From IMG/VR virus record IMGVR_UViG_3300009537_002640, positions 62,001 to 126,000 of that record: a stretch of 64,000 nucleotides of DNA; one strand, 5' to 3'. The notes under the pieces were generated by a model that worked only from the letters and a program-made list of their open reading frames with translations, was not told the origin of the DNA and did not search any database. The translations under genes were made by a program, and so were the position numbers. Shown here piece by piece: positions 1 through 17,369 of the stretch. The stretch's first letter is position 1. Each line of letters opens with the position of its first letter.

Positions 1-93
1 TTTGCGCATCTCAGGATCATTCCTTTGCTCGCGCATCCACTCTACATTGGAAGGGTCTATCTCTTTCAGATATACTTTATCACCAACTATCAT
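1..93 (-). CDS. GNAT/RimJ-RimL family acetyltransferase, N-terminus only (runs off the window)
   Basis: Not in the ORF track. ATG at 93 overlaps the TGA of the upstream gene. It reads MIVGDKVYLKEIDPSNVEWMREQRNDPEMRK, which resembles the start of RimL/PseH-like GNATs. Confidence 0.6.
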   Translation of the reverse strand, partial: MIVGDKVYLKEIDPSNVEWMREQRNDPEMRK

Positions 94-593
94 CAGTTAG
101 TCCTCTTGCTCGTTTTCTTTTTACGAGCGGGCTTCTTAGACGTCTTTTTCTTAGTAGTGGCCTGAGCTATCACCTTATCCTCTTCCGACATAACTATAGC
201 TGGAGCTGTTTGCTCTTGCGGCAAATTCACCACTATAGGAGTTGTGCCCTTGCTTACAACATGAGTATCTTTATTGTCTTCATCTGAACCATATGCGGAA
301 GATGGGTCATTAACAAACTCTATCACTATGCACTCAGTCTCGGCCTCTACTTGATGCATAAAACCTGGAGGAATTGATAGAGATGTTCCTGGTTCAAAAG
401 GAATGCCCTTTATCTGCCCATTCTTAATTACTCTAATGGTAGCTTTTCCGCCCAGAAGATAAAGCACTTTCGTTAGCCTGGTATGAAACACCATGTCGGT
501 TTTCTTACCTGCTTCTATCTTGTGTACGGCACCACCAACATTACGTGCCTTGTCCCAGACAACTGCCCTGGAACCATAACCTATCTCTGACAT
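93..593 (-). CDS. Cupin-domain protein with Lys-rich C-terminal tail
   Basis: Cupin-like motifs MVFHTRLTKVLYLLGG and PGTSLSIPPGFMHQVEA; C-terminus KKKTSKKPARKKKTSKRTN. Confidence 0.65.
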   Translation of the reverse strand: MSEIGYGSRAVVWDKARNVGGAVHKIEAGKKTDMVFHTRLTKVLYLLGGKATIRVIKNGQIKGIPFEPGTSLSIPPGFMHQVEAETECIVIEFVNDPSSAYGSDEDNKDTHVVSKGTTPIVVNLPQEQTAPAIVMSEEDKVIAQATTKKKTSKKPARKKKTSKRTN

Positions 594-603
594 TGTTTTC
601 TCC

Positions 604-1434
604 TTAATATTTTCTTAGCTTCTCTATGATGGGCTGTTCACTTACATACACAGTCTTAATCCCATCACCCAATATAGTCTCAACCTCACGAGCATCACGG
701 CACAACTTACGTAAACCGGTTGGCTCCAATGATGCTGCCTGGTCACTACCATACATTGTACGGTCTAAAGTAATGTGTCGTTCAACTACGGCTGCACCTA
801 GAGATACAGCGAGCAAAGTTGGTAATAGTCCCTTTTCATGCCCGCTGAAGCCGACGCCCTTTGAATCTGGGTATCTTTCGGTGAGAGTCTTAACAACACG
901 AATATTAGACTCCCTGATGTCGGTTGGGTATGTAGAAGTGCAATGCATAACTGTAAAAGGACACTTGTGCTTCCTAAATATTTCTACTGCATGGTCAACC
1001 TGTTCTAGGGTACTCATACCCGTAGATATATAGGTGTGCTTTCCTTCTTGAGCTACAGTCTCTAATAGCTCATCGTATGTCAAGAGCGCTGAAGCAATCT
1101 TATTAAACTCTAGGTCATACTGCTGTAAGAACTTCTGGCTTTCTAAATCCCAGGCGGATGCGCTCCATGCTATACCTTTCTCTTTACAGTATCTATCTAT
1201 CTCGTCGTATTCTTCTTTGCCAAACTCTAAGCCTTCTTTCTGCTGCCTGTTGATTGTTCCCCAAGGCGATTCGCGAGACTTATCTAGCTCTTCCTTTGTA
1301 TACACTAAATCAATAGTGCGCTTTTGAAACTTAACAGCATCACATCCTGCATCTACTGCCAGGTCGATTAGCTTCTTGGCAATTCCCAAGTCACCATTGT
1401 GATTAATGCCTATCTCGGCTATAATATAAACCAT
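604..1434 (-). CDS. neuB: N-acetylneuraminate/nonulosonate synthase (NeuB family), short form without AFP-like domain
   Basis: IIAEIGINHNGD, DAVKFQKR, KIASA, ISTGM, MHCTSTYP, GFSGHE, VERHITLDR..GSDQAASLEP. Confidence 0.93.
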   Translation of the reverse strand: MVYIIAEIGINHNGDLGIAKKLIDLAVDAGCDAVKFQKRTIDLVYTKEELDKSRESPWGTINRQQKEGLEFGKEEYDEIDRYCKEKGIAWSASAWDLESQKFLQQYDLEFNKIASALLTYDELLETVAQEGKHTYISTGMSTLEQVDHAVEIFRKHKCPFTVMHCTSTYPTDIRESNIRVVKTLTERYPDSKGVGFSGHEKGLLPTLLAVSLGAAVVERHITLDRTMYGSDQAASLEPTGLRKLCRDAREVETILGDGIKTVYVSEQPIIEKLRKY

Positions 1435-1438
1435 AACT

Positions 1439-2320
1439 TTACCCCTTATTACAAACTAAAAAGATTGTATCGTGTTTTCTAATGGTTTTAAGAAATGCGG
1501 AATACGCCGCGTTCATAAAACTCAAGCTCTTAAATTTACCTGGCTTACCTCTTAGCAGCCAATACAAATGATTATCGAATGAATATCTCTGTAACCTTAT
1601 TTCTTTCTCTACTAAAAACCTCTCATTGTTTAGTAATTTGGTCAGCGATTTTGGTGTGAAGTATGAACAATGGGCGTTCTGAAAATAGAAGCTCTTGTAC
1701 TTCTCTAGCCCCACCAAGGCGTCATTGAGATTTGGAACCTCCACTATCAGACGACCATTATGACCTAACACATCATAAATATGATGCAAGAAAGGGGCTG
1801 GCTCAGGAATATGCTCTAATACATGAAAGAGGGTTACTGTATCTACCTCTTCCTTCCAATCAGAAATATTGCATAGCCTAACGTCCAGTCCTCTTTCTTG
1901 TGCGCTTCTAACTCGTGCCTCGCTAATATCTACGCCTATAGCTCCATCAATCAAACCAACAAAGTTAGAATAACCAGTGCCAACATCTAAAAGCTTGAGG
2001 TTTGGGTGTACATATTTATTCACAAGCTTTGCTCTTCTTTTATCATCTCTGGAGATTTTGGCTTGGTATTTTACGCCTGTTTCACCAGCAATAGAGGTAA
2101 CAAACTTCTTTTGCTGGTCATTATCATAAAATCTTTTGTACTCCTCATCAGTCATGACGGGGTTCAAATACACCAAATCACACTGAATACATTGCTCTAC
2201 AAGCGGGGATGGAAATGTTCCAAGGTCCTGATATTCACGAACATACATGTGTCCTCGTCTACCAAACGAATGCGTAACATCAGACTTGCATATAGGACAA
2301 TCTCTTTCTATAACTTCCAT
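1439..2320 (-). CDS. Class I SAM-dependent methyltransferase with N-terminal CxxC..CxxC
   Basis: CPIC..CIQC, LLDVGTGYS, TLFHVLEHIPEP, LIVEVPN; this form is typical of glycan-cluster methyltransferases. Confidence 0.85.
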   Translation of the reverse strand: MEVIERDCPICKSDVTHSFGRRGHMYVREYQDLGTFPSPLVEQCIQCDLVYLNPVMTDEEYKRFYDNDQQKKFVTSIAGETGVKYQAKISRDDKRRAKLVNKYVHPNLKLLDVGTGYSNFVGLIDGAIGVDISEARVRSAQERGLDVRLCNISDWKEEVDTVTLFHVLEHIPEPAPFLHHIYDVLGHNGRLIVEVPNLNDALVGLEKYKSFYFQNAHCSYFTPKSLTKLLNNERFLVEKEIRLQRYSFDNHLYWLLRGKPGKFKSLSFMNAAYSAFLKTIRKHDTIFLVCNKG

Positions 2321-3480
2321 TATAGTTCCGCTATCACTTGATCTATAAATGTATCCTTGATTATCTCTAGCTGAGTTTTCTTGGCATCCATATTTGATTT
2401 GTAGGTTGCCAGATTATTTACAACTTCATCAATTGTATTTCTTAGGTCGGCTATATCTCCCTCGGTATCCTTATTTAGTGGGATAATCAAATTACCAAGG
2501 TCTACATCTTCTAGAAACCACTTTACCTTATTATGTTCGCCTATACCAATGGGCGGAGTGTTTTGCCCAAAAGCAATAATATTAGCATGTCCTCGCATAC
2601 CTATCACCAAGTCCATTTGATTATATATGTCTACGAACAGTCCTGCCTTGTAATCAAAGGGTGGATATAGCTCCTCAGCCATACAATCAGATACTACATA
2701 GCCATCGCTACCTAAAACGCTAGTAAATAAATCCCTCATATCTTCTTTGTCGAGCTTATTAGATTCATTGGGCATTAGGTGTTCAATCAAATACACATAA
2801 GCATTATGTTCCTGTGCTTTTTCTTTTAGCACATTGAGAGTGGTATCCAGTTTGGTCTTCGCCAAATTACTATCATTGCTCAAATCAAATCTTTGGTTCC
2901 ACCTATCTGTTGCCCAATTGAACCCTATCTTGAGCCTGTTATTATCTAAACAGCTATGAGTATAGGGATAAGCCTCCGCAAATACCGCTGCATCAGGCAC
3001 TACGGTTACATTGGTCATATCAACACCGAAGGATTCCATGGTTTCATAAGTGCCCATATTGCGCACAGAAAATGCTACGGAGTTGTTCACTACTTCTTTT
3101 ACACTATCCCACATAGACTGCGGGAAGCCCACTTGGTCATGCGGAAATTCATTATAGCCTATTCCATATACGGCTATAGGCACTGTGATACTAGCTATAT
3201 TCTCTGTGTCAATGTTGAATTGCCAACCAGAGTGACTGTTGTCTTGTGGGCGATGAAAAATAAAACCGCCGCCGCCCAGCAATAACATATCGGCCTCTGC
3301 ATTCAACTTAGCAATTATTTGAGGAGAAAAGTAAGTGTTCTGATTATCCACATATACAAAACGCAACTCTGTCCCAGCTGGTGCTCGGTCACGCATTATT
3401 TTAGTGGTGGCTATCTGTAAAGCTCTGTCGCCATAGTTGTTTGACCAGCCGCCTACATGCCATATTGTCTTAACTGTCAT
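2320..3480 (-). CDS. Polysaccharide pyruvyl transferase family protein
   Basis: NNYGD, LLLGGGG, YGIGY, FSVRN, VVPDAA, VIGMRGHANIIA. Confidence 0.85.
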   Translation of the reverse strand: MTVKTIWHVGGWSNNYGDRALQIATTKIMRDRAPAGTELRFVYVDNQNTYFSPQIIAKLNAEADMLLLGGGGFIFHRPQDNSHSGWQFNIDTENIASITVPIAVYGIGYNEFPHDQVGFPQSMWDSVKEVVNNSVAFSVRNMGTYETMESFGVDMTNVTVVPDAAVFAEAYPYTHSCLDNNRLKIGFNWATDRWNQRFDLSNDSNLAKTKLDTTLNVLKEKAQEHNAYVYLIEHLMPNESNKLDKEDMRDLFTSVLGSDGYVVSDCMAEELYPPFDYKAGLFVDIYNQMDLVIGMRGHANIIAFGQNTPPIGIGEHNKVKWFLEDVDLGNLIIPLNKDTEGDIADLRNTIDEVVNNLATYKSNMDAKKTQLEIIKDTFIDQVIAEL

Positions 3481-4156
3481 GAATTAAAGCCTCCGCCATT
3501 GTCCAGTCTGCAGAATCATTAATGTCTACAGAAAAGTTTTTACCCATCCTGTAAGCATATACCTTTCCTTGATGAAAGCTGTTTGTCTTCTTCAAATGTT
3601 CTGCAGTAGAAACAAAAATAGAACCATTTACTACAAATAATGGTTTCTTTATATCCTGTCTTTGTACCTCAAAATTATCAACCCTAACAATAGTTTGCAT
3701 GACGCCCTCTTCATCTATCCATCGTAAACTACTGATTGGCTTATCAAACCTAGACACACTGATAACAGAATCACAGTCCTTCCTGTCTAAAAGCGTAAAA
3801 GCTGCATCAATATCTAGGTTGGTTCTCAGTGGAGATGTAGCCAATAGCATAGCTACACTCCCTATTATTATACCCTGTTCTTCGTAAAAGTTTAAGCACT
3901 CCAATACAGCGTGGACTGCATGAACATCATCTTGGGCATTCTCTTGAGAGCGCCAATGAATCTCTGCGCCATATTGCTTTGCCACTTCGGCAATCTCAGC
4001 ATCCTCTGTAGACACCACAACCCTATCAACTGTGCGCGCCGTGAGAGCAGACTGAATACTATATGCCACCAAGGGCTTCCCTGCCAACTCTTTAATGTTC
4101 TTTCGCTCGATGGCCTTAGAACCACCACGAGCAGGTATTACACACATGTTTATCAT
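3470..4156 (-). CDS. neuA: Acylneuraminate cytidylyltransferase (CMP-nonulosonate synthetase)
   Basis: VIPARGGSKAIERKNI, VVVSTED, LLATSPLR, NGSIF, SVDINDSADW. Confidence 0.92.
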   Translation of the reverse strand: MINMCVIPARGGSKAIERKNIKELAGKPLVAYSIQSALTARTVDRVVVSTEDAEIAEVAKQYGAEIHWRSQENAQDDVHAVHAVLECLNFYEEQGIIIGSVAMLLATSPLRTNLDIDAAFTLLDRKDCDSVISVSRFDKPISSLRWIDEEGVMQTIVRVDNFEVQRQDIKKPLFVVNGSIFVSTAEHLKKTNSFHQGKVYAYRMGKNFSVDINDSADWTMAEALIHDS

Positions 4157-4569
4157 GCATCTTTGTCCTCTGGCCCTACTGAGCCTGGCCCTCTCCTAGG
4201 ACTCTCGTAATCTTTCAAGAAGTCTCTAAGGTCTTTCGCACTGCTACCGTCCTCTCTAAGCCTGAAGCCCCTATCATCCACATATATATCTCCTAATATT
4301 TTGCCCAAGTGTAGCTCGTGAAACTTAACTCCCCAGCCCTCTAGTTGTGATTTAGTAAGACAGTACCAATCCTTGTAGGCTAAAGCTCTATTACCATTGT
4401 GCTTACCCATACCTCGTGCTGTGTGAAATATTATGTAATGCCCCGCATCGTACATTTCATTTATCACTGCTATCATGTCTTCATAAGGATATGCATCCTC
4501 ATAATGTCCGTTTGTGTTATTGCAAATAGTTCCGTCGATGTCGAACACTAAACGCCACTTTTGATTCAT
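4153..4569 (-). CDS. Small HAD-family phosphatase (capsule-biosynthesis EcbF-like)
   Basis: FDIDGTIC (motif I), HTARG (II), GK (III), DIYVDD (IV). Confidence 0.85.
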   Translation of the reverse strand: MNQKWRLVFDIDGTICNNTNGHYEDAYPYEDMIAVINEMYDAGHYIIFHTARGMGKHNGNRALAYKDWYCLTKSQLEGWGVKFHELHLGKILGDIYVDDRGFRLREDGSSAKDLRDFLKDYESPRRGPGSVGPEDKDA

Positions 4570-5324
4570 TATCTACTCCTCATAAAATCATCGATATCTA
4601 AACCGATAGCTTTCTTTATCAAACCATGACTAAAATCATAGACCACTATTCCTGCATCAGTAAACTTGGTGTTAATCATTTTGTCTATATACTCTGCACT
4701 TTCTTGAAAAAACTTTGTTGTCTTATATTCTTTACCCTCGTGTGTAATTGTTATGACTGGGCTTCTATTTGCCAGCTTAGTCGTACTTTTGCGATAATGG
4801 CTATCTGGATAATAATGATCAAACTCATCCTTGAACATTAAGTCCGCACCTATGAGATATATTTTCTTTGAACCTATCATTGCGGCAAAATGCATAGCGT
4901 TTAGTGTTACCGTTCCTACCGATAAACCCTTGTGTCCTCTCGGGCCTATAAGAAACCCCTCGTGTTCTTTATGTTTGTATTTACGAATATTAGGCAGCCC
5001 ATCGAAATAAGAACGAGTCGCAGGAACAGCATTAATGTCCTTGGGGAATTTGTTCAAACTTTTGTTATTCAGTATACGAGGCAGGTCTTTTCTATAGGGC
5101 TCTTTCTTCATAGACTCATAGGATTTAATAGGATTCTTCTCCAGTATCATATGATAATCTAACTGCTCTTCGAAATCCTTGGTGGAAAAGTTCAATCCCA
5201 CAATAACATCAAACTTACCCCGCAACTGGTCTTTATACGGAACTAGGGTTTTAGTTGAATGACCCGTACCTATTATAAGCACAGAACTACCAGGGTGTTT
5301 GTTTTCAAAATCACTTGGTGTCAT
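4569..5324 (-). CDS. DUF115/Maf-like (GT-A variant) putative nonulosonate transferase
   Basis: VLIIGTGHS, IVGLN, TVTLNAMHFAAMIGSKKIYLIGADL..HYY; this pattern is seen in DUF115/Maf and CstII-like folds. Confidence 0.65.
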   Translation of the reverse strand: MTPSDFENKHPGSSVLIIGTGHSTKTLVPYKDQLRGKFDVIVGLNFSTKDFEEQLDYHMILEKNPIKSYESMKKEPYRKDLPRILNNKSLNKFPKDINAVPATRSYFDGLPNIRKYKHKEHEGFLIGPRGHKGLSVGTVTLNAMHFAAMIGSKKIYLIGADLMFKDEFDHYYPDSHYRKSTTKLANRSPVITITHEGKEYKTTKFFQESAEYIDKMINTKFTDAGIVVYDFSHGLIKKAIGLDIDDFMRSR

Positions 5325-6445
5325 ATTTGTGAAATCCTATTTTGTATTCGTTTATGAGCCTGTCCATCAAATGTTATACCCATCTTGTCTAACAAGGCTT
5401 TCTGTTTCTCTGGCTCATGATATCTTCCATATCTCAGACAATCCCTTAGCTTCTGGTCAAGGTCTTTTAAATCAGTTATCTCTACTGCCGCACCTGACTT
5501 CACAGTATCGTAGGGGTCGTATCCGTGCTGGCTATTCTCTTTGGTGCGCACAACAAACAAAGGCTTGCCCATAGCACATGCCTCTATCTCTACTGTCGAA
5601 CAACCATTCACTACAAAGATGTCAGCAAAGTAATAATCCAGCACATGATTTTGTCTTGGCCCGATATAACTCACTCTGGTCTTCTCGTATGTCTTTCTGT
5701 ACTTGTCTCGTAGTTCTGGTAGTCCGTGCTTTTTGAAATAGCCCATTAGCTTTTCTTTTTCCTGCCTAGGTTTCACATATAACAAAAACCTTTCGCTATG
5801 TGCCAACCTACTTAATTCAACAGTGGTCTTAAAATAATCTTCGTTGTGATTTACGAAATCTATTCTATCCTTGCAGCAGAATCCGAAGAAGGCAACAACC
5901 TTTGCTTCTGGATTTTCTTTGTATGCTGTGGGGAAATCTACTGGTAATCTTTCTTTCCTATTATGCTCTACGCCATTGTAAAGTATGTCTAGTTGGGGCA
6001 AAGCATTCAGTAGTATCTTATCCTCGCCAACTTTAGCCACATGAGTTATCCAATCTGTAAATACATCATCCCAGGCACCACAATAAAGGTCGCAGCCCTT
6101 CCACACTTCGGTCCTAAACGCTGCTGGCTTAATCAAACCCTTCACATGATTTCCTACTAACCCATGACTAACGTAGACCTTCTTACAACCAGCAGGCAGT
6201 CTAACTCCCTCTGCACATGGCAAGGATGCCTGAACATACACATCTGGCTGAAACTCATCCACACACTGTTGTAGCTCTTTGCTATTGGCATAATACTTTA
6301 GTGTATCGATTCCAAAGTTATCAGCATCTCCGGGCTCTGGTTTTCCTGGCAACACCATGCGCTGTTTCATTTCCAAGCTCATGGGAAATGCCTGAAAAGC
6401 CCTCTTGTGTGCTGGGGATGTTGCTACATACAGTACTCGTTTCAT
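5321..6445 (-). CDS. GT-B fold protein, CDP-glycerol glycerophosphotransferase/sialyltransferase-like
   Basis: YVSHG, ALPQLD, YVKPR, ADIFVVNGCSTVEIEACAMGKPLF, FDGQAHKRI. Confidence 0.65.
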   Translation of the reverse strand: MKRVLYVATSPAHKRAFQAFPMSLEMKQRMVLPGKPEPGDADNFGIDTLKYYANSKELQQCVDEFQPDVYVQASLPCAEGVRLPAGCKKVYVSHGLVGNHVKGLIKPAAFRTEVWKGCDLYCGAWDDVFTDWITHVAKVGEDKILLNALPQLDILYNGVEHNRKERLPVDFPTAYKENPEAKVVAFFGFCCKDRIDFVNHNEDYFKTTVELSRLAHSERFLLYVKPRQEKEKLMGYFKKHGLPELRDKYRKTYEKTRVSYIGPRQNHVLDYYFADIFVVNGCSTVEIEACAMGKPLFVVRTKENSQHGYDPYDTVKSGAAVEITDLKDLDQKLRDCLRYGRYHEPEKQKALLDKMGITFDGQAHKRIQNRISQI

Positions 6446-7515
6446 AGTTCGTTTTTAATCGCCTCACAGATTCTCTTGCACGCTTGATCGTCTACCTTGT
6501 AAAAGTACTTCTCTATAAGCCAATCCATGCTGCCTAATGCCAGATTGCCACTCAAGAGTTTGTGCAAATCATTAGCATCATAAGCAGTAGGCATTTCATT
6601 TTTAAACTCTGGAAGTCCCTGCAATTCTTGAGATTTTCCAAACAAAACAAAGATAGATGGCTTCTTGAGAACGGCGGCTTCTAGCATCATAGTGCTAGCG
6701 AAACCTACTACTATATCCGAAAAAATTAGCAGTTCTTTAGATTCCCGCCCAGAATTCCTTATATCTCCAATGACCTTTAAATAACTCTTAGGCTTCTTGT
6801 AATGGCTTTCCAACAGCCCAGAAACTTCTTTCCCGCTACCTATTTTCTTCCTATAGCACTTAAAGGACATTGGGTGAATCTTAATGACCACCTGATAATC
6901 TCTATTGTGCCTAGCAAACTCTTCTAGAGCCCGTATAGTTTCCTCTCGCTCTGGAAATAGGTCTATCTTAATATCTACGCCATTCTCCTTCATGTAACAA
7001 TATGGTGGGTATGACGGAAAGAAAATAGTCTTCTTGTTAGGGTCTAATCCGAACTTCTTTGCTATGGCCTCTCTACTTGCCCAATTCTTCCTATCTACAT
7101 AATAATCCCATCGAGGGTAGCCAGTAATTACTGTTTTTGTTTTGTCCTTCCATAGTTCAGCATATGCAGGGCTTGGAGCTAATACCACATCTGGCGTGAA
7201 ATAGTACTCGTTATTGAAGAAGAATTTTTCCTGAGAGAACATAGCTTCCTTTAGAATATCTGTTTTCAGAGGCTCTCTTGGCATCAGAAAAACCTTAAGC
7301 CCCTTGTCTCTTAGGTACTGAAGTGTTTTCCTAATAGGAATCTCCCAGACCTCGGAGGCTATGACAAACTCATAATCAGGCTTTACCCCTTGTCTTGGAA
7401 TATGAAATGCATCTGGATGTAAGTCTATACGTAAACCAAACTTTTCAGGGCTCCAGAGTGACGAAGACTGAAAATCTATCTGCCAGGTTCTGGGGTCTAA
7501 GAATAATCCCTTCAT
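6442..7515 (-). CDS. GT-B fold surface-carbohydrate transferase (sialyltransferase/TagF-like)
   Basis: ITGYPRWD, IKIHP, SDIVVGFASTMMLEAAVLKKP, DDQACKRI. Confidence 0.7.
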   Translation of the reverse strand: MKGLFLDPRTWQIDFQSSSLWSPEKFGLRIDLHPDAFHIPRQGVKPDYEFVIASEVWEIPIRKTLQYLRDKGLKVFLMPREPLKTDILKEAMFSQEKFFFNNEYYFTPDVVLAPSPAYAELWKDKTKTVITGYPRWDYYVDRKNWASREAIAKKFGLDPNKKTIFFPSYPPYCYMKENGVDIKIDLFPEREETIRALEEFARHNRDYQVVIKIHPMSFKCYRKKIGSGKEVSGLLESHYKKPKSYLKVIGDIRNSGRESKELLIFSDIVVGFASTMMLEAAVLKKPSIFVLFGKSQELQGLPEFKNEMPTAYDANDLHKLLSGNLALGSMDWLIEKYFYKVDDQACKRICEAIKNEL

Positions 7516-8342
7516 ACAAATGAACCTTCTCCCTCTGGATAAAACTTCACCAGTGGCACATATTCTTTCATAAAGGCTATTTCTGCCTCGTTGTATTTCT
7601 TAGTATAGGTGCGAGTAGTTGTATTAAATATAGTGGCGTCAGTCTCCTGTATGCCATCAAAACTTACAGTCACCACCAACTGCCCATCAAACTCTGGATG
7701 CTTCTCCACAAACTCATTCACTATCTGCCTTAGCTTCATAGCCTTTTGAATGGGGGTCTTTTCGTCAAACTGATGGCCAACCTTATCGGTGATATCCTTA
7801 GCTGGAGAGCCACCATACACATGATTAGGCTCCATATCCTTTGTGATAACTGAGCCCACTAATGCCATACTCTTCTCACCAATCTTAACAGGAGAAACTA
7901 TACAGTGTCCAACAAGCCAGGCGTCTTTACCTATATACATAGGCTTACGGGAATGCCATCTGGGATTAAGCCCCTCAACTAAATCTCCGAACTGAGCGTG
8001 AGTCCATATTTGACTATGGGCACCTATACCTACGCCGTCATCTATTGTTAAGCCCCCAAGAGAATCTAGCACTGTATTCCCGCCAATCCAACAACACCTG
8101 CCTATCTTCATTGGCAAGGAGCCATGAGCAAATGCAAATGCATGAAGTTTAGAATAGTCTCCGAGCCTAAACTCAGGTACTATAATTCTAGATTCTCTGC
8201 CTATATAGCAGAAATCACCAAGCACAACTTTCTCAGCAGGGCCACCTTTGCCCGTGATTACTACGCCTTCCTCTATAACTACTCCGCGCCCTATCTGTAT
8301 GTCCTTGGCATTTATTTTGCCACGGATATCACTCTCAATCAT
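7512..8342 (-). CDS. Hexapeptide-repeat (left-handed beta-helix) acyltransferase
   Basis: Repeated IG...I hexapeptides, QIWTH, KIGEKSMALVGSVITKD, YGGSPAK. Confidence 0.85.
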   Translation of the reverse strand: MIESDIRGKINAKDIQIGRGVVIEEGVVITGKGGPAEKVVLGDFCYIGRESRIIVPEFRLGDYSKLHAFAFAHGSLPMKIGRCCWIGGNTVLDSLGGLTIDDGVGIGAHSQIWTHAQFGDLVEGLNPRWHSRKPMYIGKDAWLVGHCIVSPVKIGEKSMALVGSVITKDMEPNHVYGGSPAKDITDKVGHQFDEKTPIQKAMKLRQIVNEFVEKHPEFDGQLVVTVSFDGIQETDATIFNTTTRTYTKKYNEAEIAFMKEYVPLVKFYPEGEGSFV

Positions 8343-9637
8343 GTCTTATCTCCAGACATCTCCTTTTTGAAAATGGTCACTGAGCGCTCACCTTCTAGAT
8401 ATTTATCTATAGCGTCTTCTTTTACAGCCTGACCAACAAACTTAAGACTCTCTTTCATAGCATTGATTGTTTGAGTAATGTGTTCTGGTTTATGAGCCCA
8501 AATCACATTTACATTTGTACCCATGAGAATGCCTCGCTTAACCATTTCTTGATGAAACAAATCCTTAACGCCGCCTGGGTCATCAGTCTCGAACTTAGCT
8601 ACTAATCTTGGTCCGATGCCTACCATATGGGCATTGATACCATTCTGCTTGCATAGTTGATTAAATGCCTCTCTAATTGCTGCGCCTTGAGTCCAAAGAT
8701 AAGGATAGATATCATTCTTACCTTCCTTTAGTTCCTTAACAGTCTCTATAGCAGCAGCTATAGAGCAAGCCTCGCCACCAAATGTTGAGGAGAAGAAAAC
8801 ATGGTCTAGCTCTTGCATATACTTCCTCTTGCCCGCAAGAACTGAGATTGGCATCCCATTAGATATCGCCTTACCAAACGTAGCCATATCTGGAACAACC
8901 CCATAGTATTCTTGTGCGCCACCTAATGCCAGCCTAAAACCAGTTATCATTTCATCGAATATTAGAATAGTTTCATACCTGTCACACAGCTCTCTTACGC
9001 CCTCTAAGAATCCTGGCTTAGGAGGGTCTAGAGCAACTGGCTCCATAATAACTGCTGCAAACTTTCCAGTCTTAAGCTTCTCTTCCAAACTGTCCAGATT
9101 GTTATATTCAAATCGTTCTACCAGAGACTTTAGACACTTTGGTAGCCCGTAATCTCTTGGGGTAGCTGCAGCAAAGAAATCTGCCCAACCATGATAATGG
9201 CCTTCTGGACTCAATATATGCTCCTTGCCAGTATGTGCTCTGGCAACACGGACAGCAATAGAAGTCACATCAGAACCATTCTTGCCATACCTAACCTGCT
9301 CAGCACATGGAATTACATCATATAGAAGTTCAGCAAGCTCTACCTCTACAGGGTGCATTAGGGAAAATACGCTGCCTTTCCTAATTTGCTGTTCCACTGC
9401 CTTAACTGTTCTTTTATGCGAGTATCCCAAGATAACAGCACCGAGGCCACATGGATAATCTATATACCAGTTGCCATCTACATCCTTTACCTTACAGCCT
9501 TCACCGCGCTCTAAATAGATTGGATGAACCCCGAAGACATATTGGTCGGGAGCCTTACTCATTGTTTGCGTACCACGAGGCATCAATTCAACTCCTCGCT
9601 TCCACAGTTCTAATGACTTAGTAATTTTTCTTGACAT
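8339..9637 (-). CDS. Class III PLP aminotransferase (glutamate-1-semialdehyde aminomutase-like, glycan-cluster type)
   Basis: DVDGNWYID, ILGY, KNGSD, HYHGW, IFDEMITGFR, PDMATFGKAISNGMP, STFGG. Confidence 0.9.
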   Translation of the reverse strand: MSRKITKSLELWKRGVELMPRGTQTMSKAPDQYVFGVHPIYLERGEGCKVKDVDGNWYIDYPCGLGAVILGYSHKRTVKAVEQQIRKGSVFSLMHPVEVELAELLYDVIPCAEQVRYGKNGSDVTSIAVRVARAHTGKEHILSPEGHYHGWADFFAAATPRDYGLPKCLKSLVERFEYNNLDSLEEKLKTGKFAAVIMEPVALDPPKPGFLEGVRELCDRYETILIFDEMITGFRLALGGAQEYYGVVPDMATFGKAISNGMPISVLAGKRKYMQELDHVFFSSTFGGEACSIAAAIETVKELKEGKNDIYPYLWTQGAAIREAFNQLCKQNGINAHMVGIGPRLVAKFETDDPGGVKDLFHQEMVKRGILMGTNVNVIWAHKPEHITQTINAMKESLKFVGQAVKEDAIDKYLEGERSVTIFKKEMSGDKT

Positions 9638-9649
9638 GTTAAACTCCTC

Positions 9650-10210
9650 TTATTGCCATTCCTGCAATTTGTAAAAACGGTGGGCTGCTAGATAATCCCC
9701 CTCTAAAAAATACTCTTGTGGGATAACGCAATACTCTTTGAACCCATTTCTATCTAGCACTTTAATAGAGCCTATGTTGCCTTCTACCACACCCGCTTCA
9801 ATCTTATTCATGTTGAGTCTATTGAAGCAATAATCTGAGAGAAGACTCACTACCTCGGTAGCTATACCTGCACCCCAGTAGTTTTCTTCCCCTATCATGT
9901 ATCCAACTTCTGCTCGTCTAGAAATCCAATCAATGCTATTTATAGATGTTGTCCCTATATAGTTGAGATACTCGTTGTCTTGAACTAGTGCATCCTTAAC
10001 TTTATCATAGGACAAATTGGACATCATTGCGAACCTCATTTCCCTTTGTCCATCTGGAATTGTTATTTCCTCTCTACACAAAGGTATGCGACCGGCGAAC
10101 ATATATCTATTAACCCTATGGTCATTAAGCCAATCTATGTATTTAGCAGTCACGTGACGGTCTGTGAATTTTACCAGTCTAACCTTGCTGCCCTTCAAGT
10201 ATTCCATCAC
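9650..10210 (-). CDS. GNAT N-acetyltransferase (PseH/RimL-like)
   Basis: YIDWLND, AEVGYMIGE..YWGAGIATE, LNMNKIEAGV..NIGSIKVLDRNGF. Confidence 0.85.
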   Translation of the reverse strand: MMEYLKGSKVRLVKFTDRHVTAKYIDWLNDHRVNRYMFAGRIPLCREEITIPDGQREMRFAMMSNLSYDKVKDALVQDNEYLNYIGTTSINSIDWISRRAEVGYMIGEENYWGAGIATEVVSLLSDYCFNRLNMNKIEAGVVEGNIGSIKVLDRNGFKEYCVIPQEYFLEGDYLAAHRFYKLQEWQ

Positions 10211-10458
10211 ATCACCCGCGTGTATTTTATTTCATCCGTATCTTGCCTAAACTCTACAGCGAACTTCTTAATCCTTCGCATATCACTTCCGCGAACCTCG
10301 GTGCGCTTAAATACACCTTGTTTAATAACCTCTCTCCAGCTCACATAAACAACAGTCCACTCTTTGCCAGAGTTTCTAGAGGTGCCATCTTCAGCATACA
10401 ACTTGGCTTCCTTTGTTAATACAGCTTCATATAGCTTTACTATAGCTGGGTCTATCAT
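10207..10458 (-). CDS. Hypothetical protein
   Basis: 83-aa ORF with 4-nt start/stop overlaps on both sides. Confidence 0.6.
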   Translation of the reverse strand: MIDPAIVKLYEAVLTKEAKLYAEDGTSRNSGKEWTVVYVSWREVIKQGVFKRTEVRGSDMRRIKKFAVEFRQDTDEIKYTRVM

Positions 10459-10877
10459 TGTTTACCTCCCAATTGATCCATAGCTCGTGCAACAAGTTCA
10501 CTGGAACTCTGTGCCTTTTCACCACCTAGATTCCATACGAGCTTTATGTCTAGTTCTTCACACAAAGCAACCTCGGGAGTATTTTCATTCTTCCTGTCGC
10601 CACCATTCCCAAAATACATCACACCGGCCCTATGTTCCCTTAGAGCCTCACACACCGTATCGTCGCTGTCGTCAACTGGAACTACATACTCTACGTTTTC
10701 AAGATTCAATAATATCTCGCAGCGTTCTTCCCATGGCATAAACACGTAGCCCTTCTTTCTCTTGAGCCAGGCGTCACTATTGAGGATGATAAGAACTTTG
10801 TCCACTTTAGCAGCATCGTTTATCATCCTCAGGTGCCCAATATGCAACGGGTCAAAACCACCAGACAAAGCTATCAT
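10455..10877 (-). CDS. HxGH cytidylyltransferase (TagD/glycerol-3-phosphate cytidylyltransferase-like)
   Basis: SGGFDPLHIGHL, LNSDAWL.RKKG, FGNGGDR, SSS. Confidence 0.88.
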   Translation of the reverse strand: MIALSGGFDPLHIGHLRMINDAAKVDKVLIILNSDAWLKRKKGYVFMPWEERCEILLNLENVEYVVPVDDSDDTVCEALREHRAGVMYFGNGGDRKNENTPEVALCEELDIKLVWNLGGEKAQSSSELVARAMDQLGGKQ

Positions 10878-11587
10878 ACCATTGCATCCTTTATAGCCTT
10901 ATTTAAGTCTCCGTGCTTATCATACTCTCTTGTTAAAGCTACCAACATATCGTAATCTTCTTTAGTATCGAATGAAAAATCTTTGATTTTCTGACTGATT
11001 TGACTATTAGGCCGATTATTTAGAAATGGATAAATATCATACTTGGTGCCTACCCTGTACATATATGGGCTAACGTGCTCTCTCATCTGTTGGTCTTTGG
11101 CATATTTCCATGTTTCAGCCAACATCCAATAAGGAAATATTTCTACATCAGTTCCGTCTGGATATGGATTAGGAGATATCAACCCATTGTTTCCCATAAA
11201 GCCATTGTATCCTCTACTAAGATATTCAATCAACATTTCGTCTATGATATATCCTTGAATGAGAGGACAGTCTGCCGTAACCCTAACTATTAGGTTAATT
11301 CCCACTCTTCTGGCTGCTTGGAAATATCTATCCACTAAATCGTCAGAATCTCCAAAATAAACACTAAACCGGCCGTCCACAACTTCAGTAAACTCACCCT
11401 TGCTGTCTCGCTCTAAAAACTCTTGTTTATCATACTCTGGCATAGCAAGCACAATCCTCTGTGGTACTGCTGCACTCTTAACACCTTCCAAGACTCGCTG
11501 TAATGTATATTTGCCATTGATATCCTGATATGTCTTTCTAGGAAATCTATTAGAACCTGTGCGTGCCTGAATTATAACTCCAATCAT
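10874..11587 (-). CDS. SpsF/PseF-like CMP-sugar cytidylyltransferase
   Basis: IIQARTGSNRFPRK, DLVDRY, IVRVTADCPL, YPDGTDVE, REHVSPY, FDTKEDY. Start moved to ATG 11587, which follows a GGAG RBS. Confidence 0.88.
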   Translation of the reverse strand: MIGVIIQARTGSNRFPRKTYQDINGKYTLQRVLEGVKSAAVPQRIVLAMPEYDKQEFLERDSKGEFTEVVDGRFSVYFGDSDDLVDRYFQAARRVGINLIVRVTADCPLIQGYIIDEMLIEYLSRGYNGFMGNNGLISPNPYPDGTDVEIFPYWMLAETWKYAKDQQMREHVSPYMYRVGTKYDIYPFLNNRPNSQISQKIKDFSFDTKEDYDMLVALTREYDKHGDLNKAIKDAMV

Positions 11588-11675
11588 TCTACACTCCAAC
11601 TTATAAAAGCTTTCGCACCTACCCCCTAAGATATTATGGTAAGTGCCCGAATAAACACAATATTACCTGCTTAGT

Positions 11676-12527
11676 TTAACTGCTTGTTTTGACATTATTT
11701 AAATCCTCGATAATGCTACATATTCTAGCAGAACCCCTGCCATCAATATAGCTCTTAGCGAATCTACTCAAAGACTCTCTTTTGTAACTACTCTCTAACA
11801 ATTCCTCCACATGGCCCTTAAGACGCAACATATCACTCTCTATACATCCCTCTGGAAACATTTTTATGTTAGTGAGCTGATGTTCATACTGAGGAATTGC
11901 GATTGTGGGTAGCCCGAAACACATAGCTTGTATCAGAGTAAGCCCACCGTTAGTTATTCCTATCATACAGTCTTGCATGGCGTTATAGTAGTCATCCTCA
12001 GTTAAAACCTCTACGTTCTTAAAAAACATCTTGAAATTAGAATGGTTTATACTCCTAGCCACTATCACTGGCACATCCATAGATTCTAGCATTCTGACTA
12101 CTCTGTATGCCAAATTATTAGCGTCAAAGCCTCCCATGGCAACAAATGCTGTTTTAGACTTAGTGTCCAGTCTATATGTTTCGCTATAAGAGGGCTTCGG
12201 TATAGCAAAGTACTTCGCGCCCTGATACTGTGCAAGTGGATTATAAATAGCGCTAACGCTTGCGTCTACCAACTCTACATCTTCTTCGGCACCATCTATA
12301 AGCACAACCTTTACTCCCGCAGCTTTCGCCTTAAGTATCAAGTCCCTTTGGGTGTGTATATGGTCAACTACAAGAACCTTTGCTTCTGGATTACATTCCC
12401 TATTCTGAACCCAAGATGTAACATGACCTCTGGAGGATAGTTCGCGTGCAATTTCCAATAATCTGTATAAATGCCCGGTACCTATTTCACGCTTCTCTCC
12501 ATGTTCACAAAACAAAGAAACATGCAT
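11676..12527 (-). CDS. PseG/SpsG-like nucleotide-sugar hydrolase (GT-B fold)
   Basis: IGTGHLYRLLEIA, VAMGGFD, ITNGGLTL..AMCFGLP, EHQL, IDGRGSARI. Confidence 0.82.
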   Translation of the reverse strand: MHVSLFCEHGEKREIGTGHLYRLLEIARELSSRGHVTSWVQNRECNPEAKVLVVDHIHTQRDLILKAKAAGVKVVLIDGAEEDVELVDASVSAIYNPLAQYQGAKYFAIPKPSYSETYRLDTKSKTAFVAMGGFDANNLAYRVVRMLESMDVPVIVARSINHSNFKMFFKNVEVLTEDDYYNAMQDCMIGITNGGLTLIQAMCFGLPTIAIPQYEHQLTNIKMFPEGCIESDMLRLKGHVEELLESSYKRESLSRFAKSYIDGRGSARICSIIEDLNNVKTSS

Positions 12528-13351: not shown

Positions 13352-13362
13352 CTTCTCTCCTC

Positions 13363-15111: not shown

Positions 15112-15119
15112 TTATTACC

Positions 15120-15833: not shown

Positions 15834-15834
15834 A

Positions 15835-16140
15835 TCAATACTCTATATACTGAATCATATTTCCTATAAAATCTGCCAGGTTTCCCTCATCTATCTCTAT
15901 ATTTTCTTCTCTGATATTAAGCCCGCCATCTTTACTCATGAACTTAGATATAACCCTGTTGTCTCTAAGGGCCATCTTGTAAAAAGTCTTAGCTGCCCCT
16001 TTAACAGAATCATCAGAGTTGTTCAAAGTAATATTACAATTGGAAACAACCACCTTGAGATTCTTCTCTCGTATGTTATCCAGAGTCTTATCGAACTCTC
16101 CCATGTCACATGTAATATTACAATTAGTTATACTTAGCAT
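15835..16140 (-). CDS. Hypothetical protein
   Basis: 101-aa ORF filling the gap between two enzyme genes; the motif NCNIT occurs twice. Confidence 0.6.
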   Translation of the reverse strand: MLSITNCNITCDMGEFDKTLDNIREKNLKVVVSNCNITLNNSDDSVKGAAKTFYKMALRDNRVISKFMSKDGGLNIREENIEIDEGNLADFIGNMIQYIEY

Positions 16141-16141
16141 C

Positions 16142-17368: not shown

Positions 17369-17369
17369 C

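What the first reader, a model, noticed from the sequence alone, without database searches (positions are those of the whole stretch)
604..4569. Second nonulosonate route (NeuB + NeuA + HAD phosphatase) with no NeuC in view
Seen: a second synthase and a second CMP-transferase cluster with a small HAD phosphatase; no UDP-GlcNAc 2-epimerase is in the window. Established: synthase + HAD phosphatase + CMP-synthetase trios make Kdn/Neu via a 9-phosphate intermediate (e.g. the Bacteroides Kdn pathway). Inference: the phage makes two different ulosonic acids, one possibly Kdn-like from a sugar phosphate.
Basis: partly seen in the sequence, partly recalled or inferred. Interest (0 to 1): 0.6.

Follow-up and report, generated by a model that had tools for sequence, protein, structure and literature searches.

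The report
Phage sugar-phosphate ulosonic acid operon
A large uncultured tailed phage carries a six-gene operon whose short NeuB-type synthase belongs to a huge uncharacterised clade; in cells this clade almost always sits beside a sugar-acid phosphatase, so the phage probably builds a Kdn-like (or longer) acidic sugar through a phosphorylated intermediate, in addition to a pseudaminic-acid-type route and a third synthase.

Summary
The three genes exist. NeuB-family synthase is at 604-1434, a CMP-sialate-type cytidylyltransferase at 3470-4156, and a small HAD phosphatase at 4153-4569, all on the minus strand. They are not a bare trio. They form one tightly packed operon: HAD, NeuA2, pyruvyltransferase-like, methyltransferase, NeuB2, cupin.

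No NeuC (Epimerase_2) gene reaches threshold in the window or in the 206-kb record. A third NeuB lies just outside the window.

The phosphorylated-intermediate idea is supported by comparison:
- NeuB2 belongs to a very large clade of short (~275 aa) NeuBs found in bacteria, archaea and phages.
- In cells, 61 of 81 clade members have a phosphatase within 3 kb, usually a KdsC-type gene 2-30 nt away. 26 of 81 also have a GmhA-like isomerase.
- In phages, a different small HAD and a cupin usually take those places.
- The clade is sister to Bacteroidales NeuBs that sit in Kdn-type trios, and shares basic residues with them.

The phage HAD is not the Kdn/KdsC type. Its closest characterised relative is phage HY126 AfhF, which removes the terminal phosphate of arabinose-1,5-bisphosphate.

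The sugar's identity is open: Kdn from mannose-6-P, or a ten-carbon acid from heptose-7-P.

The parts
4153..4569 (-). Small capless HAD phosphatase (138 aa), first gene of the core operon. Proposed to remove the terminal phosphate of the NeuB2 product.
   Evidence: TIGR01689 EcbF/BcbF 38 bits and HAD-IIIA 21.5 bits. PDB 9iqw E 6e-11 and 1xpj E 3e-7. Foldseek top hits are 1xpj and 9iqw, the latter titled phage HY126 D-arabinose-1,5-diphosphate phosphatase AfhF. Catalytic residues D10, D12, T14, T50, K90, D98 and D99 are invariant in 40 homologues. Overlaps NeuA2 by 4 nt.
3470..4156 (-). CMP-ulosonate synthetase NeuA2 (228 aa)
   Evidence: PF02348 80.5 bits. TIGR03584 PseF 148 bits, below the 205.7 cut-off. 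PDB 1qwj mouse CMP-Neu5Ac synthetase E 5e-29 and 1eyr E 2e-26. No BLASTP similarity to NeuA1 at 10874-11599.
2320..3480 (-). Polysaccharide pyruvyl-transferase-family protein (386 aa). Tailoring or transfer enzyme; role inferred.
   Evidence: PF04230 76.7 bits. CsaB 37.8 bits, far below cut-off. No PDB sequence match. The same family recurs beside NeuB2-clade genes in Agathobaculum L093 and in viral loci L044, L052, L073 and L082.
1439..2320 (-). SAM-dependent methyltransferase (293 aa). Probable O-methylation of the sugar; inferred.
   Evidence: PF13489 58.7 bits. Homologues lie in 15 of 80 viral and 24 of 80 cellular NeuB2-clade loci.
604..1434 (-). NeuB2: short NeuB-family PEP-aldol synthase (276 aa, no SAF/AFP domain)
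   Evidence: PF03102 236 bits. TIGR03569 246 bits and PseI 173 bits, both below cut-off. PDB 6ncs E 2e-45. Residues conserved in over 95% of the 196 aligned NeuBs are kept, including H199 and H220; that these are the metal ligands is from memory. Member of a clade of 168 sampled sequences, support 0.92-0.94.
93..593 (-). Cupin (166 aa) with a Lys-rich C-terminal tail. Divergent member of a phage cupin family that elsewhere occupies the sugar-phosphate isomerase position. The window's copy has lost most metal ligands.
   Evidence: Cupin_1 21.5 bits. Family HMM E 5e-10. In alignment A1 only H37 of the HxH..E..H motif is invariant. Atlas look-alikes are small PF01050 mannose-6-P-isomerase-type cupins, TM about 0.6. 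Foldseek top hit is cupin phosphoglucose isomerase 4lul, among generic cupins.
4569..5324 (-). 251-aa ORF directly upstream and sharing 1 nt with the HAD gene. Weak MptE/Maf-like hit; possible ulosonate transferase (lead only).
   Evidence: PF01973 20.5 bits, below the 34.6 cut-off. Conserved in the syntenic contig L199.
5321..7515 (-). Two TagB-like GT-B proteins (374 and 357 aa). Candidate nonulosonate transferases.
   Evidence: 6442-7515: Glyphos_transf 32 bits and NF046086 BFO_1060 family 59.6 bits. 5321-6445: BFO_1060 15 bits only. BFO_1060 is the T. forsythia homologue of the Pse/Leg-derivative transferases (PMC5420450).
1..93 (-). 5' end (the first ~31 codons; start codon at window 93) of a GNAT acetyltransferase gene, whole gene G000:C1:61449-62093, that follows the cupin
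   Evidence: Acetyltransf_3 60 bits. The cupin-GNAT order is kept in L199.

Best explanation
The six genes 4569->93 on the minus strand form one operon that makes and activates an ulosonic acid by the Kdo/Kdn logic rather than the NeuC/PseG logic.

Proposed steps:
1. A sugar terminal-phosphate is supplied by the host, or possibly adjusted by the cupin. Candidates are mannose-6-P or D-glycero-D-manno-heptose-7-P.
2. NeuB2 condenses it with PEP to give an ulosonate carrying a terminal phosphate.
3. The small HAD removes that phosphate.
4. NeuA2 makes the CMP-sugar.
5. The methyltransferase and the pyruvyltransferase-family protein tailor it.
6. The upstream TagB-like/Maf-like proteins transfer it.

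What is shown: gene identities, operon packing, clade membership, and the comparative linkage of this NeuB clade to phosphatases and isomerases.

What is inferred: the order of steps, that the HAD acts on the NeuB2 product, and the identity of the sugar.
For: 1. Operon packing. Overlaps of 1-11 nt or gaps of 4-10 nt join all six genes. The same order is kept in a relative at about 65-75% protein identity, L199.

2. Clade size. Well over 8000 NeuB-family proteins match at E <= 1e-20 (only the 8000 word-sharing candidates were scored); the 120 best are 63-100% identical. 241 viral and 585 or more genomic loci were confirmed, spanning Lachnospiraceae, Nitrosopumilus, Melainabacteria, SAR11 and others.

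3. Linkage to phosphatases. Within 3 kb of clade members, 61 of 81 cellular genes have a phosphatase: 55 KdsC-like and 6 small HAD. The KdsC-like gene is typically 2-30 nt away on the same strand. 26 of 81 have a GmhA-like isomerase, which is fused to the KdsC domain in Clostridia (L093: TIGR01670 108.8 bits plus TIGR00441 164.9 bits).

4. Replacement in phages. 34 of 80 viral loci carry the small HAD and 27 of 80 carry a cupin. Over 160 loci, KdsC-like and small HAD almost never co-occur: 1 has both, 59 KdsC only, 41 small HAD only. This pattern fits non-orthologous replacement.

5. Phylogeny. The NeuB2 clade has support 0.94. It is sister, at 0.92, to Bacteroidales NeuBs in NeuB-NeuA-phosphatase trios. 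Phage NeuB1 groups instead with PseB/PseC-linked paralogues, near E. coli K1 NeuB.

6. Shared residues. The two phosphatase-linked clades share residues absent from other NeuBs: K38, K66/R, R219, K272 and G198. These are candidate phosphate ligands.

7. HAD relatives. The closest characterised relative, AfhF, removes a terminal sugar phosphate. The catalytic residues are intact.

8. No alternative precursor route. No NeuC or LegG is present in 206 kb. The only PseG-like gene abuts NeuB1.
Against: - The HAD is not of the KdsC/Kdn-9-P phosphatase family.
- The same small HAD plus cupin pair also occurs in nucleotide-heptose-type modules with an HldE-like kinase and adenylyltransferase. AfhF serves an NDP-arabinose route. 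The HAD could therefore serve another pathway.
- Only 22 of 86 viral clade members have a phosphatase within 3 kb, and 25 of 86 lie near PseB/PseC.
- NeuA2's best family model is PseF.
- The window's cupin has lost the canonical metal ligands, so no credible isomerase is encoded here.
- The context counts come from related sequences and are not independent events.
- No enzyme of this NeuB clade has been assayed.
Confidence: 0.6

Rival explanations
1. The HAD, perhaps with the cupin and the CTP_transf_like gene at 10455-10877, belongs to an NDP-sugar route of the kinase/phosphatase type, as for ADP-heptose or UDP-arabinose. NeuB2 and NeuA2 then use an unphosphorylated sugar, and the adjacency is only island packing.
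For: - Small HAD plus cupin, even fused (P0100), sit with an HldE-domain-I-like PfkB kinase, an HldE-domain-II-like adenylyltransferase, an SDR epimerase and a GT9 in L086 and L089.
- AfhF acts on arabinose-1,5-bisphosphate.
- GmhB structures are among the Foldseek hits.
- The window's CTP_transf_like best matches rfaE domain II at 48.8 bits.
Against: - No PfkB kinase was found in the 206-kb record, even at E <= 1.
- Only 3 of 80 viral NeuB2 loci have a PfkB, against 34 with the HAD.
- The HAD is translationally coupled to NeuA2.
- The window's CTP_transf_like is only 28% identical to the L086 enzyme and lies 6 kb away in the first route.
Confidence: 0.15
2. NeuB2 is a second synthase of the diacetamido (Pse/Leg/Aci-type) family. 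It uses a stereoisomer made from the same PseB/PseC products as route 1, and the HAD is irrelevant.
For: - NeuA2's best NCBIfam model is PseF at 148 bits.
- There is one PseB/PseC pair but three NeuBs.
- 25 of 86 viral NeuB2-clade genes have PseB or PseC within 3 kb.
- Extra GNAT and hexapeptide acetyltransferases are present.
Against: - In loci holding PseB/PseC, a second NeuB paralogue of about 30% identity is usually adjacent to them, and that paralogue groups with phage NeuB1, not NeuB2.
- Cellular NeuB2-clade genes rarely have PseB/C nearby (8 of 81) but usually have a phosphatase (61 of 81).
- No second hydrolase (PseG, LegG) is present.
Confidence: 0.12
3. The route is phosphate-dependent, but the substrate is ManNAc-6-P, giving Neu5Ac-9-P as in animals. 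ManNAc-6-P would be fed by the phage GlmS and a GNAT through GlcNAc-6-P.
For: - A full-length GlmS is present (662 bits, above cut-off) and there are two GNATs, one directly after the cupin.
- NeuA2's best solved relative is the mouse CMP-Neu5Ac synthetase.
- From memory, not tested here: the motifs KFQK, SGHE and ERHITLD of NeuB2 resemble human NANS.
Against: - No ManNAc-6-P 2-epimerase or ManNAc kinase was seen in the ORFs scanned (window 93-32945 and about 18 kb upstream), but neither family was searched for specifically.
- Cellular clade members pair with GmhA-like isomerases, not with amino-sugar enzymes.
Confidence: 0.08

Closest known systems
Bacteroides thetaiotaomicron CMP-Kdn pathway (BT1714 Kdn-9-P synthase, BT1713 phosphatase, CMP-Kdn synthetase). 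Also the P. parvum Kdn-9-P synthetase (PMC6200933).
   Same: - Short NeuB-family synthase plus HAD phosphatase plus CTP_transf_3 enzyme, with no NeuC.
- The Bacteroidales trios found here (L190-L193) are the sister clade of NeuB2.
- They share K38, K66/R, R219, K272 and G198 with it.
   Different: - NeuB2 is only 35-36% identical to them.
- The phage phosphatase belongs to another HAD family.
- The operon adds a methyltransferase, a pyruvyltransferase-family protein and a cupin.
- Cellular members of the NeuB2 clade add a GmhA-like isomerase that the Kdn trios lack within about 3-6 kb of flank.
Kdo pathway (KdsD isomerase, KdsA synthase, KdsC phosphatase, KdsB CMP-transferase)
   Same: Same four-step logic: ketose-P isomerase, PEP condensation, terminal dephosphorylation, CMP activation. 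Cellular partners of the NeuB2 clade are KdsC/YrbI-family proteins.
   Different: - The synthase is NeuB-fold, not KdsA.
- 5 of 5 diderm genomes carrying a NeuB2+KdsC-like pair also have a canonical KdsA, so the product is probably not Kdo.
- The isomerase is GmhA-like or a cupin, not KdsD.
Phage HY126 AfhF (PDB 9iqw) and the EcbF/BcbF 'capsule biosynthesis phosphatase' family TIGR01689
   Same: Closest relatives of the window's HAD: E 6e-11, 31% identity and top Foldseek hits. AfhF is a phage-encoded, Mg-dependent enzyme that removes a terminal primary phosphate from a sugar phosphate (PMC13326640).
   Different: AfhF works on arabinofuranose-1,5-bisphosphate in a UDP-arabinose route for DNA modification. 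Here the gene is coupled to a CMP-ulosonate synthetase and a NeuB, and no kinase is present.
ADP/GDP-heptose pathway (GmhA, HldE/HddA, GmhB, HldC/HddC)
   Same: GmhA-like isomerases (165-202 bits on TIGR00441) flank cellular NeuB2-clade genes. The phage small HAD and cupin fill the GmhB and GmhA positions in viral heptose-type modules.
   Different: No kinase or heptose nucleotidyltransferase sits next to NeuB2. The aldose-phosphate would be consumed by PEP condensation instead of C1 phosphorylation.
Pseudaminic acid pathway (PseB, C, H, G, I, F)
   Same: It is present in the same window as route 1: PseB-like 18567-19715, PseC-like 16142-17368, GNAT 9650-10210, PseG-like 11676-12527, NeuB1 12527-13414 and NeuA1 10874-11599.
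   Different: The finding's genes are separate paralogues. NeuB2 and NeuB1 are 33% identical and the two NeuAs are not alignable. They have a different comparative context.

Membership tests
NeuB family (PF03102) PEP-dependent ulosonate synthases | Full-length match to the NeuB TIM-barrel domain with conserved metal and PEP residues | tested here: met
   236 bits over model positions 1-241. Universally conserved E7, N11, H12, K35, Q37, D96, K112, S115, H199, E218, H220 and D231 are present.
Canonical NeuB/PseI/LegI (TIGR03569, TIGR03586 equivalogs) | Score above the equivalog cut-off, and a C-terminal SAF/AFP domain (~330-350 aa) | tested here: not met
   245.9 bits against a 399.65 cut-off, and 173.3 against 340.25. 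The protein ends at 276 aa with no SAF domain hit.
Kdn-9-P synthase of the B. thetaiotaomicron BT1714 type | Orthology to synthases in NeuB-NeuA-Kdn-9-P-phosphatase trios | tested here: not met
   35-36% identity to the Bacteroidales trio synthases. Sister clade, not a member.
Kdn-9-P synthase of the B. thetaiotaomicron BT1714 type | Condenses mannose-6-P with PEP | not testable with these tools
   Needs an enzyme assay. Supported only by shared clade-specific basic residues and phosphatase linkage.
KdsC/YrbI and Kdn-9-P phosphatase family (TIGR01670, NF058599) | Sequence membership of the window's HAD | tested here: not met
   No hit at E <= 0.01. No PDB KdsC or BT1713 hit at E <= 1. Foldseek gives 3e81 at E 0.014, TM 0.32.
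EcbF/BcbF-AfhF small HAD-IIIA phosphatases (TIGR01689; PDB 9iqw, 1xpj) | Sequence and structure similarity, with intact DxDxT, T, K and DD catalytic motifs | tested here: met
   9iqw E 6e-11 and 1xpj E 3e-7. These are the top Foldseek hits. The motifs are invariant. TIGR01689 scores only 38 bits against a 162 cut-off, so this is a distant member.
CMP-nonulosonate synthetases (CTP_transf_3) | Pfam membership, and closest solved relatives being CMP-sialate synthetases rather than KdsB | tested here: met
   80.5 bits. 1qwj E 5e-29 and 1eyr E 2e-26, against KdsB structures at E 3e-7. The PseF equivalog cut-off is not reached, 148 against 205.7.
NeuC/LegG hydrolysing UDP/GDP-GlcNAc 2-epimerases (PF02350) | A gene above the gathering score anywhere in the record | tested here: not met
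   One hit of 27.5 bits (cut-off 30.6), which is the PseG-like ORF. The record is a fragment, CheckV 25%.
Metal-dependent cupin sugar-phosphate isomerases (cPGI, PMI type) | HxH...E...H metal ligands | tested here: not met
   The common viral family keeps them. The window's subfamily keeps only H37, and H79 is Y in 3 of 5. Fold similarity alone is generic.
Polysaccharide pyruvyl transferases (PF04230) | Pfam membership; a PEP-dependent ketal-forming activity | tested here: inconclusive
   76.7 bits against a 25.3 cut-off, but CsaB/WcaK equivalogs fall far below cut-off and there is no solved relative by sequence. Activity was not testable.

The most novel reading that the evidence does not exclude
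The NeuB2 clade, in this phage and in thousands of bacteria and archaea, condenses PEP with D-glycero-D-manno-heptose-7-phosphate. The product would be a ten-carbon 3-deoxy-ulosonic acid 10-phosphate. It would then be dephosphorylated (KdsC-like enzyme in cells, AfhF-like HAD in phages), CMP-activated and methylated or pyruvylated. This would be a class of 'deculosonic' sugars not yet described.

Grounds:
- The dedicated isomerase in cellular loci is GmhA-like, at 165-202 bits on the gmhA model.
- It is the only GmhA-like gene in the 5 of 5 genomes checked whose NeuB2 locus encodes one (Roseburia, Acetatifactor, Hungatella, a Clostridia MAG, Nitrosopumilus), although Hungatella shows a second, unplaced hit.
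- The four Clostridia among these already have a canonical ManA for mannose-6-P.
- Of the diderm genomes that have only the KdsC partner, 4 of 5 carry a GmhA-like gene elsewhere.
- The phage cupin and HAD fill the GmhA and GmhB positions in viral heptose modules.
- A mass-spectrometry survey reported rare 'higher carbon chain ulosonic acids' (PMC8157484).
- No paper in the library names such a sugar.
Probability: 0.25. Interest if true: 0.85.

Novelty: new variant of a known kind. Interest (0 to 1): 0.62.

Why it matters
If right, this phage and many relatives encode a complete phosphate-dependent ulosonic acid route, so far characterised only in Bacteroides, a haptophyte and animals. The phosphatase is a non-orthologous replacement drawn from the family that other phages use for DNA-sugar precursors.

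The finding also draws attention to a very large, well conserved and unassayed NeuB clade. It occurs in gut Lachnospiraceae flagellin islands, ammonia-oxidising archaea, SAR11 and Prochlorococcus. Its product is unknown: Kdn, a ten-carbon acid, or something else. One enzyme assay could name a surface sugar for thousands of organisms and could explain the widespread 'Kdn/Neu-type' signals seen in environmental surveys.

For phage biology, three synthases inside a roughly 50-kb glycan island next to baseplate genes suggest heavy glycan decoration of the virion or of the infected cell.

Tried and rejected
- Megablast of window 1-6000 against 50,697 phage records: no match.
- tblastn of NeuB2 against the same set: 3 records, all unannotated or distant.
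- Literature searches for 9IQW, 'capsule biosynthesis phosphatase', NeuB+GmhA+KdsC, deculosonic acids, and phosphoheptose isomerase with NeuB: nothing relevant.
- The look-up of sequencing runs on 604-4569: none was listed.
- PfkB kinase in the phage record: none at E <= 1. This weakens the nucleotide-heptose reading.
- Kdo as the product: unlikely, because all 5 diderm genomes tested keep a canonical KdsA. G001, where two KdsC-like hits were found, also keeps a separate KdsC-like gene.
- Cupin as a proven isomerase: rejected for the window's copy because the metal ligands are missing. Foldseek hits are generic cupins.
- Promoter and terminator scan of 1-9000: counts no higher than in shuffles.
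FastTree SH-like supports on a curated L-INS-i alignment were used instead.
- Characterised Pse, Leg and Neu synthases other than E. coli K1 NeuB could not be brought in by any tool, so the tree lacks them.
- Human NANS could not be fetched. Its motif similarity is stated from memory only.
- No alternative genetic code was needed. The large representative search and complex prediction were not used.

Full report
**Where the window lies.** The window is bases 62001-126000 of a 206,495-bp linear IMG/VR virus record that CheckV rates about 25% complete. All long ORFs are on the minus strand. A baseplate wedge protein (42509-45736) and a tail sheath (61482-63938) mark it as a contractile-tailed phage. 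Window positions ~1-33000, together with at least 18 kb upstream of the window, form one long glycan-biosynthesis island.

**The observation.**
- 604-1434 is a NeuB-family protein of 276 aa (PF03102, 236 bits).
- 3470-4156 is a CTP_transf_3 cytidylyltransferase.
- 4153-4569 is a 138-aa HAD.

They are not a simple trio. Between them lie a SAM methyltransferase (1439-2320) and a PS_pyruv_trans-family protein (2320-3480). A cupin (93-593) follows NeuB. The six genes overlap by 1-11 nt or are 4-10 nt apart.

A metagenomic relative with about 65-75% identical proteins keeps exactly this order: Maf-like, HAD, NeuA2, pyruvyltransferase-like, methyltransferase, NeuB2, cupin, GNAT (L199). A promoter and terminator scan adds nothing beyond chance.

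**NeuC.** Pfam Epimerase_2 searched over the whole record gives a single sub-threshold hit (27.5 bits). That hit is the PseG-like ORF 11676-12527, directly next to the first NeuB (TIGR03590, 53 bits). 'No NeuC in view' therefore holds for all 206 kb, with the caveat that the record is a fragment. It found a third NeuB (235 aa, G000:C1:59857-60564) flanked by methyltransferases and TagB-like transferases. Only two CTP_transf_3 genes serve the three synthases.

**Route 1.** This is a pseudaminic-acid-type set. It comprises a PseB-like dehydratase, PseC-like aminotransferase (342 bits), a GNAT, a PseG-like hydrolase, NeuB1 and NeuA1. A full GlmS, an SDR, a GSA-aminomutase-like aminotransferase and a hexapeptide acetyltransferase accompany them.

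**Are the synthases different?**
- The three NeuBs are about 33% identical to one another.
- The two cytidylyltransferases are not alignable by BLASTP.
- In a tree of 196 NeuB-family ORFs, NeuB2 sits in a clade of 168 sequences (support 0.92). The ORFs were taken from 80 viral loci, 80 genomic loci, Bacteroidales loci and E. coli K1.
- NeuB1 groups with paralogues that lie beside PseB/PseC, near E. coli K1 NeuB. NeuB3 is in a third group.

**What the NeuB2 clade is.** It is very large and well conserved:
- Well over 8000 proteins match at E <= 1e-20 (only 8000 candidates were scored); the 120 best are 63-100% identical.
- There are 241 confirmed viral loci.
- There are at least 585 genomic loci from Lachnospiraceae, Roseburia, Selenomonas, Melainabacteria, Acidobacteria, Leptospirales, SAR11, SAR116, Prochlorococcus, Nitrosopumilus, Methanoperedens and others.
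- All members are short, about 275 aa.

I searched labelled query proteins with phmmer against all ORFs of the 160 loci. In cells the clade is tied to a phosphatase:
- 61 of 81 members have one within 3 kb. 55 are KdsC/YrbI-like.
- The KdsC-like gene usually lies 2-30 nt away on the same strand.
- 26 of 81 also have a GmhA-like SIS isomerase.
- In Clostridia the two are fused. The Agathobaculum protein scores 108.8 bits on TIGR01670 (above cut-off), 105 bits on the B. thetaiotaomicron KDN-9-P phosphatase model and 164.9 bits on gmhA. It sits in a flagellin island that also has a PS_pyruv_trans gene and a methyltransferase.
- Other KdsC-like partners score 89-171 bits on the KDN-9-P phosphatase model, about as well as on the KdsC models.

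In phages these partners are mostly replaced:
- 34 of 80 loci carry the window's kind of small HAD.
- 27 of 80 carry a small cupin.
- Only 3 of 80 carry a KdsC-like gene.
- Across all 160 loci, KdsC-like and small HAD co-occur once (59 KdsC only, 41 small HAD only).

The sequences are related, so these are not independent events. Even so, the pattern is what replacement of one phosphatase by another would give.

**Relation to the known Kdn pathway.** I searched 201 Bacteroidales genomes with the KDN-9-P phosphatase equivalog. Of the seven best-scoring phosphatase loci I extended, four (L190-L193; phosphatase 170-183 bits, two of them over the 180-bit cut-off) hold NeuB(296-297 aa)-NeuA-phosphatase clusters, contiguous in two. 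This is the arrangement described for B. thetaiotaomicron and used as the model in PMC6200933. Those synthases are only 35-36% identical to NeuB2. On a curated 69-sequence alignment they are nevertheless the sister of the NeuB2 clade (0.92; NeuB2 clade 0.94).

The two phosphatase-linked clades share residues that the other NeuBs lack:
- K38 (KFQK instead of KFQT)
- K66/R
- R219 (ERH instead of EKH)
- K272
- G198 (SGH instead of SDH), W95 and S93

Four of these are basic and are candidate ligands of a terminal phosphate. This is inference. No coordinates were available to check it.

**The phosphatase.** It is not the Kdn/KdsC type:
- There is no TIGR01670 or NF058599 hit.
- There is no KdsC or BT1713 structure at E <= 1 by sequence.
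- 3e81 appears only at E 0.014 by fold.

Its relatives are TIGR01689 (EcbF/BcbF), 1xpj and 9iqw. The entry title of 9iqw is 'phage HY126 encoded D-arabinose 1,5-diphosphate phosphatase AfhF'. According to PMC13326640, AfhF is an Mg-dependent enzyme that removes the terminal C5 phosphate of arabinofuranose-1,5-bisphosphate on the way to UDP-arabinose for DNA arabinosylation.

Homologues of the window's HAD also sit, sometimes fused to a cupin, next to HldE-like kinase and adenylyltransferase genes, an SDR epimerase and a GT9. There they fill the GmhB position of a nucleotide-heptose pathway. The family's common denominator is removal of a terminal primary phosphate from a sugar phosphate. That is also what an ulosonate 9- (or 10-) phosphate requires.

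Catalytic residues are invariant. The model is confident, pLDDT 85.

**The cupin.** The common viral cupin has the full HxH..E..H metal motif. It lies immediately after NeuB2 in several loci, for example L013, and in the GmhA position of the heptose modules.

The window's cupin is a divergent relative (HMM E 5e-10):
- It keeps only H37.
- It has H or Y at position 79.
- It carries a Lys-rich tail.
- Atlas look-alikes are small mannose-6-P-isomerase-type cupins.
- Foldseek hits are generic cupins, led by cupin phosphoglucose isomerase.

I therefore do not claim an isomerase for this phage. The sugar phosphate may simply come from the host.

**Which sugar?** Three chain lengths were considered.

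*Kdo (C8).* This is unlikely. All five diderm genomes tested that carry a NeuB2+KdsC-like pair also have a canonical KdsA. G001 also has a separate KdsC-like gene.

*Kdn (C9, from mannose-6-P).*
- It is the conservative reading, because the sister clade is Kdn-type.
- The cupin look-alikes are of PMI type.
- Kdn/Neu-type acids are common in environmental prokaryotes (PMC8157484).

*A ten-carbon acid from heptose-7-P.*
- The dedicated isomerases are GmhA-like, at 165-202 bits on a model whose cut-off is 209.
- In the five genomes whose locus encodes one, the locus copy is the only GmhA-like gene, apart from a second, unplaced hit in Hungatella.
- The four Clostridia among them already have ManA.
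- Four of five diderm genomes with only the KdsC partner have a GmhA-like gene elsewhere.
- The same survey paper notes rare 'higher carbon chain ulosonic acids'.

None of this decides the matter, and an operon-dedicated isozyme is common. I give the general phosphate-dependent mechanism 0.6 and the ten-carbon reading 0.25.

**Other parts.**
- NeuA2's nearest solved relatives are CMP-Neu5Ac synthetases: mouse 1qwj at E 5e-29 and N. meningitidis 1eyr.
- The upstream TagB-like proteins match the BFO_1060 family (59.6 bits). That family is the T. forsythia homologue of the Pse/Leg-derivative transferases. They are candidate transferases.
- The roles of the methyltransferase and the pyruvyltransferase-family protein are inferred from family only.

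**Verdict.**
- The inference of a second, sugar-phosphate-based ulosonic route is reasonably supported by comparative context and phylogeny.
- The specific Kdn assignment and the assumed phosphatase type are not supported.
- The most interesting outcome is the large unassayed NeuB clade to which the gene belongs.

**Limits.**
- ORFs were called mechanically.
- Loci were collected by similarity to NeuB2.
- Supports are SH-like.
- Few characterised synthases could be included in the tree.
- Nothing was assayed.

Noticed in passing
G000:C1:59857-60564 (= L005:15857-16564, minus strand), 1.4-2.1 kb before window position 1: A third NeuB-family gene: 235 aa, PF03102 167 bits, 33% identical to NeuB2. 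It is flanked by two methyltransferases and TagB-like GT-B proteins. The 206-kb record has no third CTP_transf_3 gene.
   Followed up: partly
window 18567-19715 (-): The PseB-like dehydratase (Polysacc_synt_2, 269 bits) carries an N-terminal MerR/HTH_17 DNA-binding domain (residues 1-48). This is an unusual fusion of a regulator-type domain to a sugar-nucleotide enzyme.
   Followed up: no
window 13363-15111 (-): A full-length GlmS (662 bits, above the equivalog cut-off) is encoded by the phage inside the glycan island. It presumably boosts the hexosamine supply.
   Followed up: no
window 93-593 (-), residues ~140-166: The cupin and its four close relatives end in a strongly basic Lys/Arg/Thr-rich tail that the common viral cupin family lacks. 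They have also lost most metal ligands. The function is unclear.
   Followed up: partly
L093 (Agathobaculum sp., NCBI GCA_964248325.1), 5224-20825: A flagellin gene is followed by GT2, CDP-glucose pyrophosphorylase, NeuB2-clade synthase, KdsC-GmhA fusion, TPP enzyme, radical SAM/SPASM, FkbM methyltransferase, PS_pyruv_trans, GT2, dehydratase and DegT. This is a gut-Clostridia flagellin glycosylation island built around the same synthase clade. No CTP_transf_3 gene lies within 10 kb.
   Followed up: partly
L086, L089-L091 (metagenomic viral-like contigs): Modules of HldE-domain-I-like PfkB kinase, HldE-domain-II-like adenylyltransferase, small HAD and cupin (HAD-cupin fused in P0100), with an SDR epimerase and GT9. 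This looks like a nucleotide-heptose pathway in which a cupin replaces GmhA and an AfhF-like HAD replaces GmhB.
   Followed up: partly
L005:5437-6243 (-), L005:8480-8953 (-), L005:9442-9999 (-): A LAGLIDADG homing-endonuclease-like ORF, a Macro-domain protein and an AAA_28 protein are embedded in the upstream part of the glycan island, among GT1 and GT2 genes.
   Followed up: no
window 32995-42509 and 47504-59620 (-): Very large ORFs (940, 2185, 647, 652, 1581 and 839 aa) next to the baseplate wedge gene have no significant PHROG match, apart from a weak hit to an unknown-function family for the 1581-aa ORF. They are possibly fibres or receptor-binding proteins, and possible targets of the glycan island.
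   Followed up: no
window 8339-9637 (-): A glutamate-1-semialdehyde-aminomutase-like class III aminotransferase (NF004856, 354 bits). It recurs, together with an SDR, beside NeuB2-clade genes in 16 of 80 viral and 16 of 80 cellular loci. It may act in side-chain modification of the ulosonic acid.
   Followed up: no
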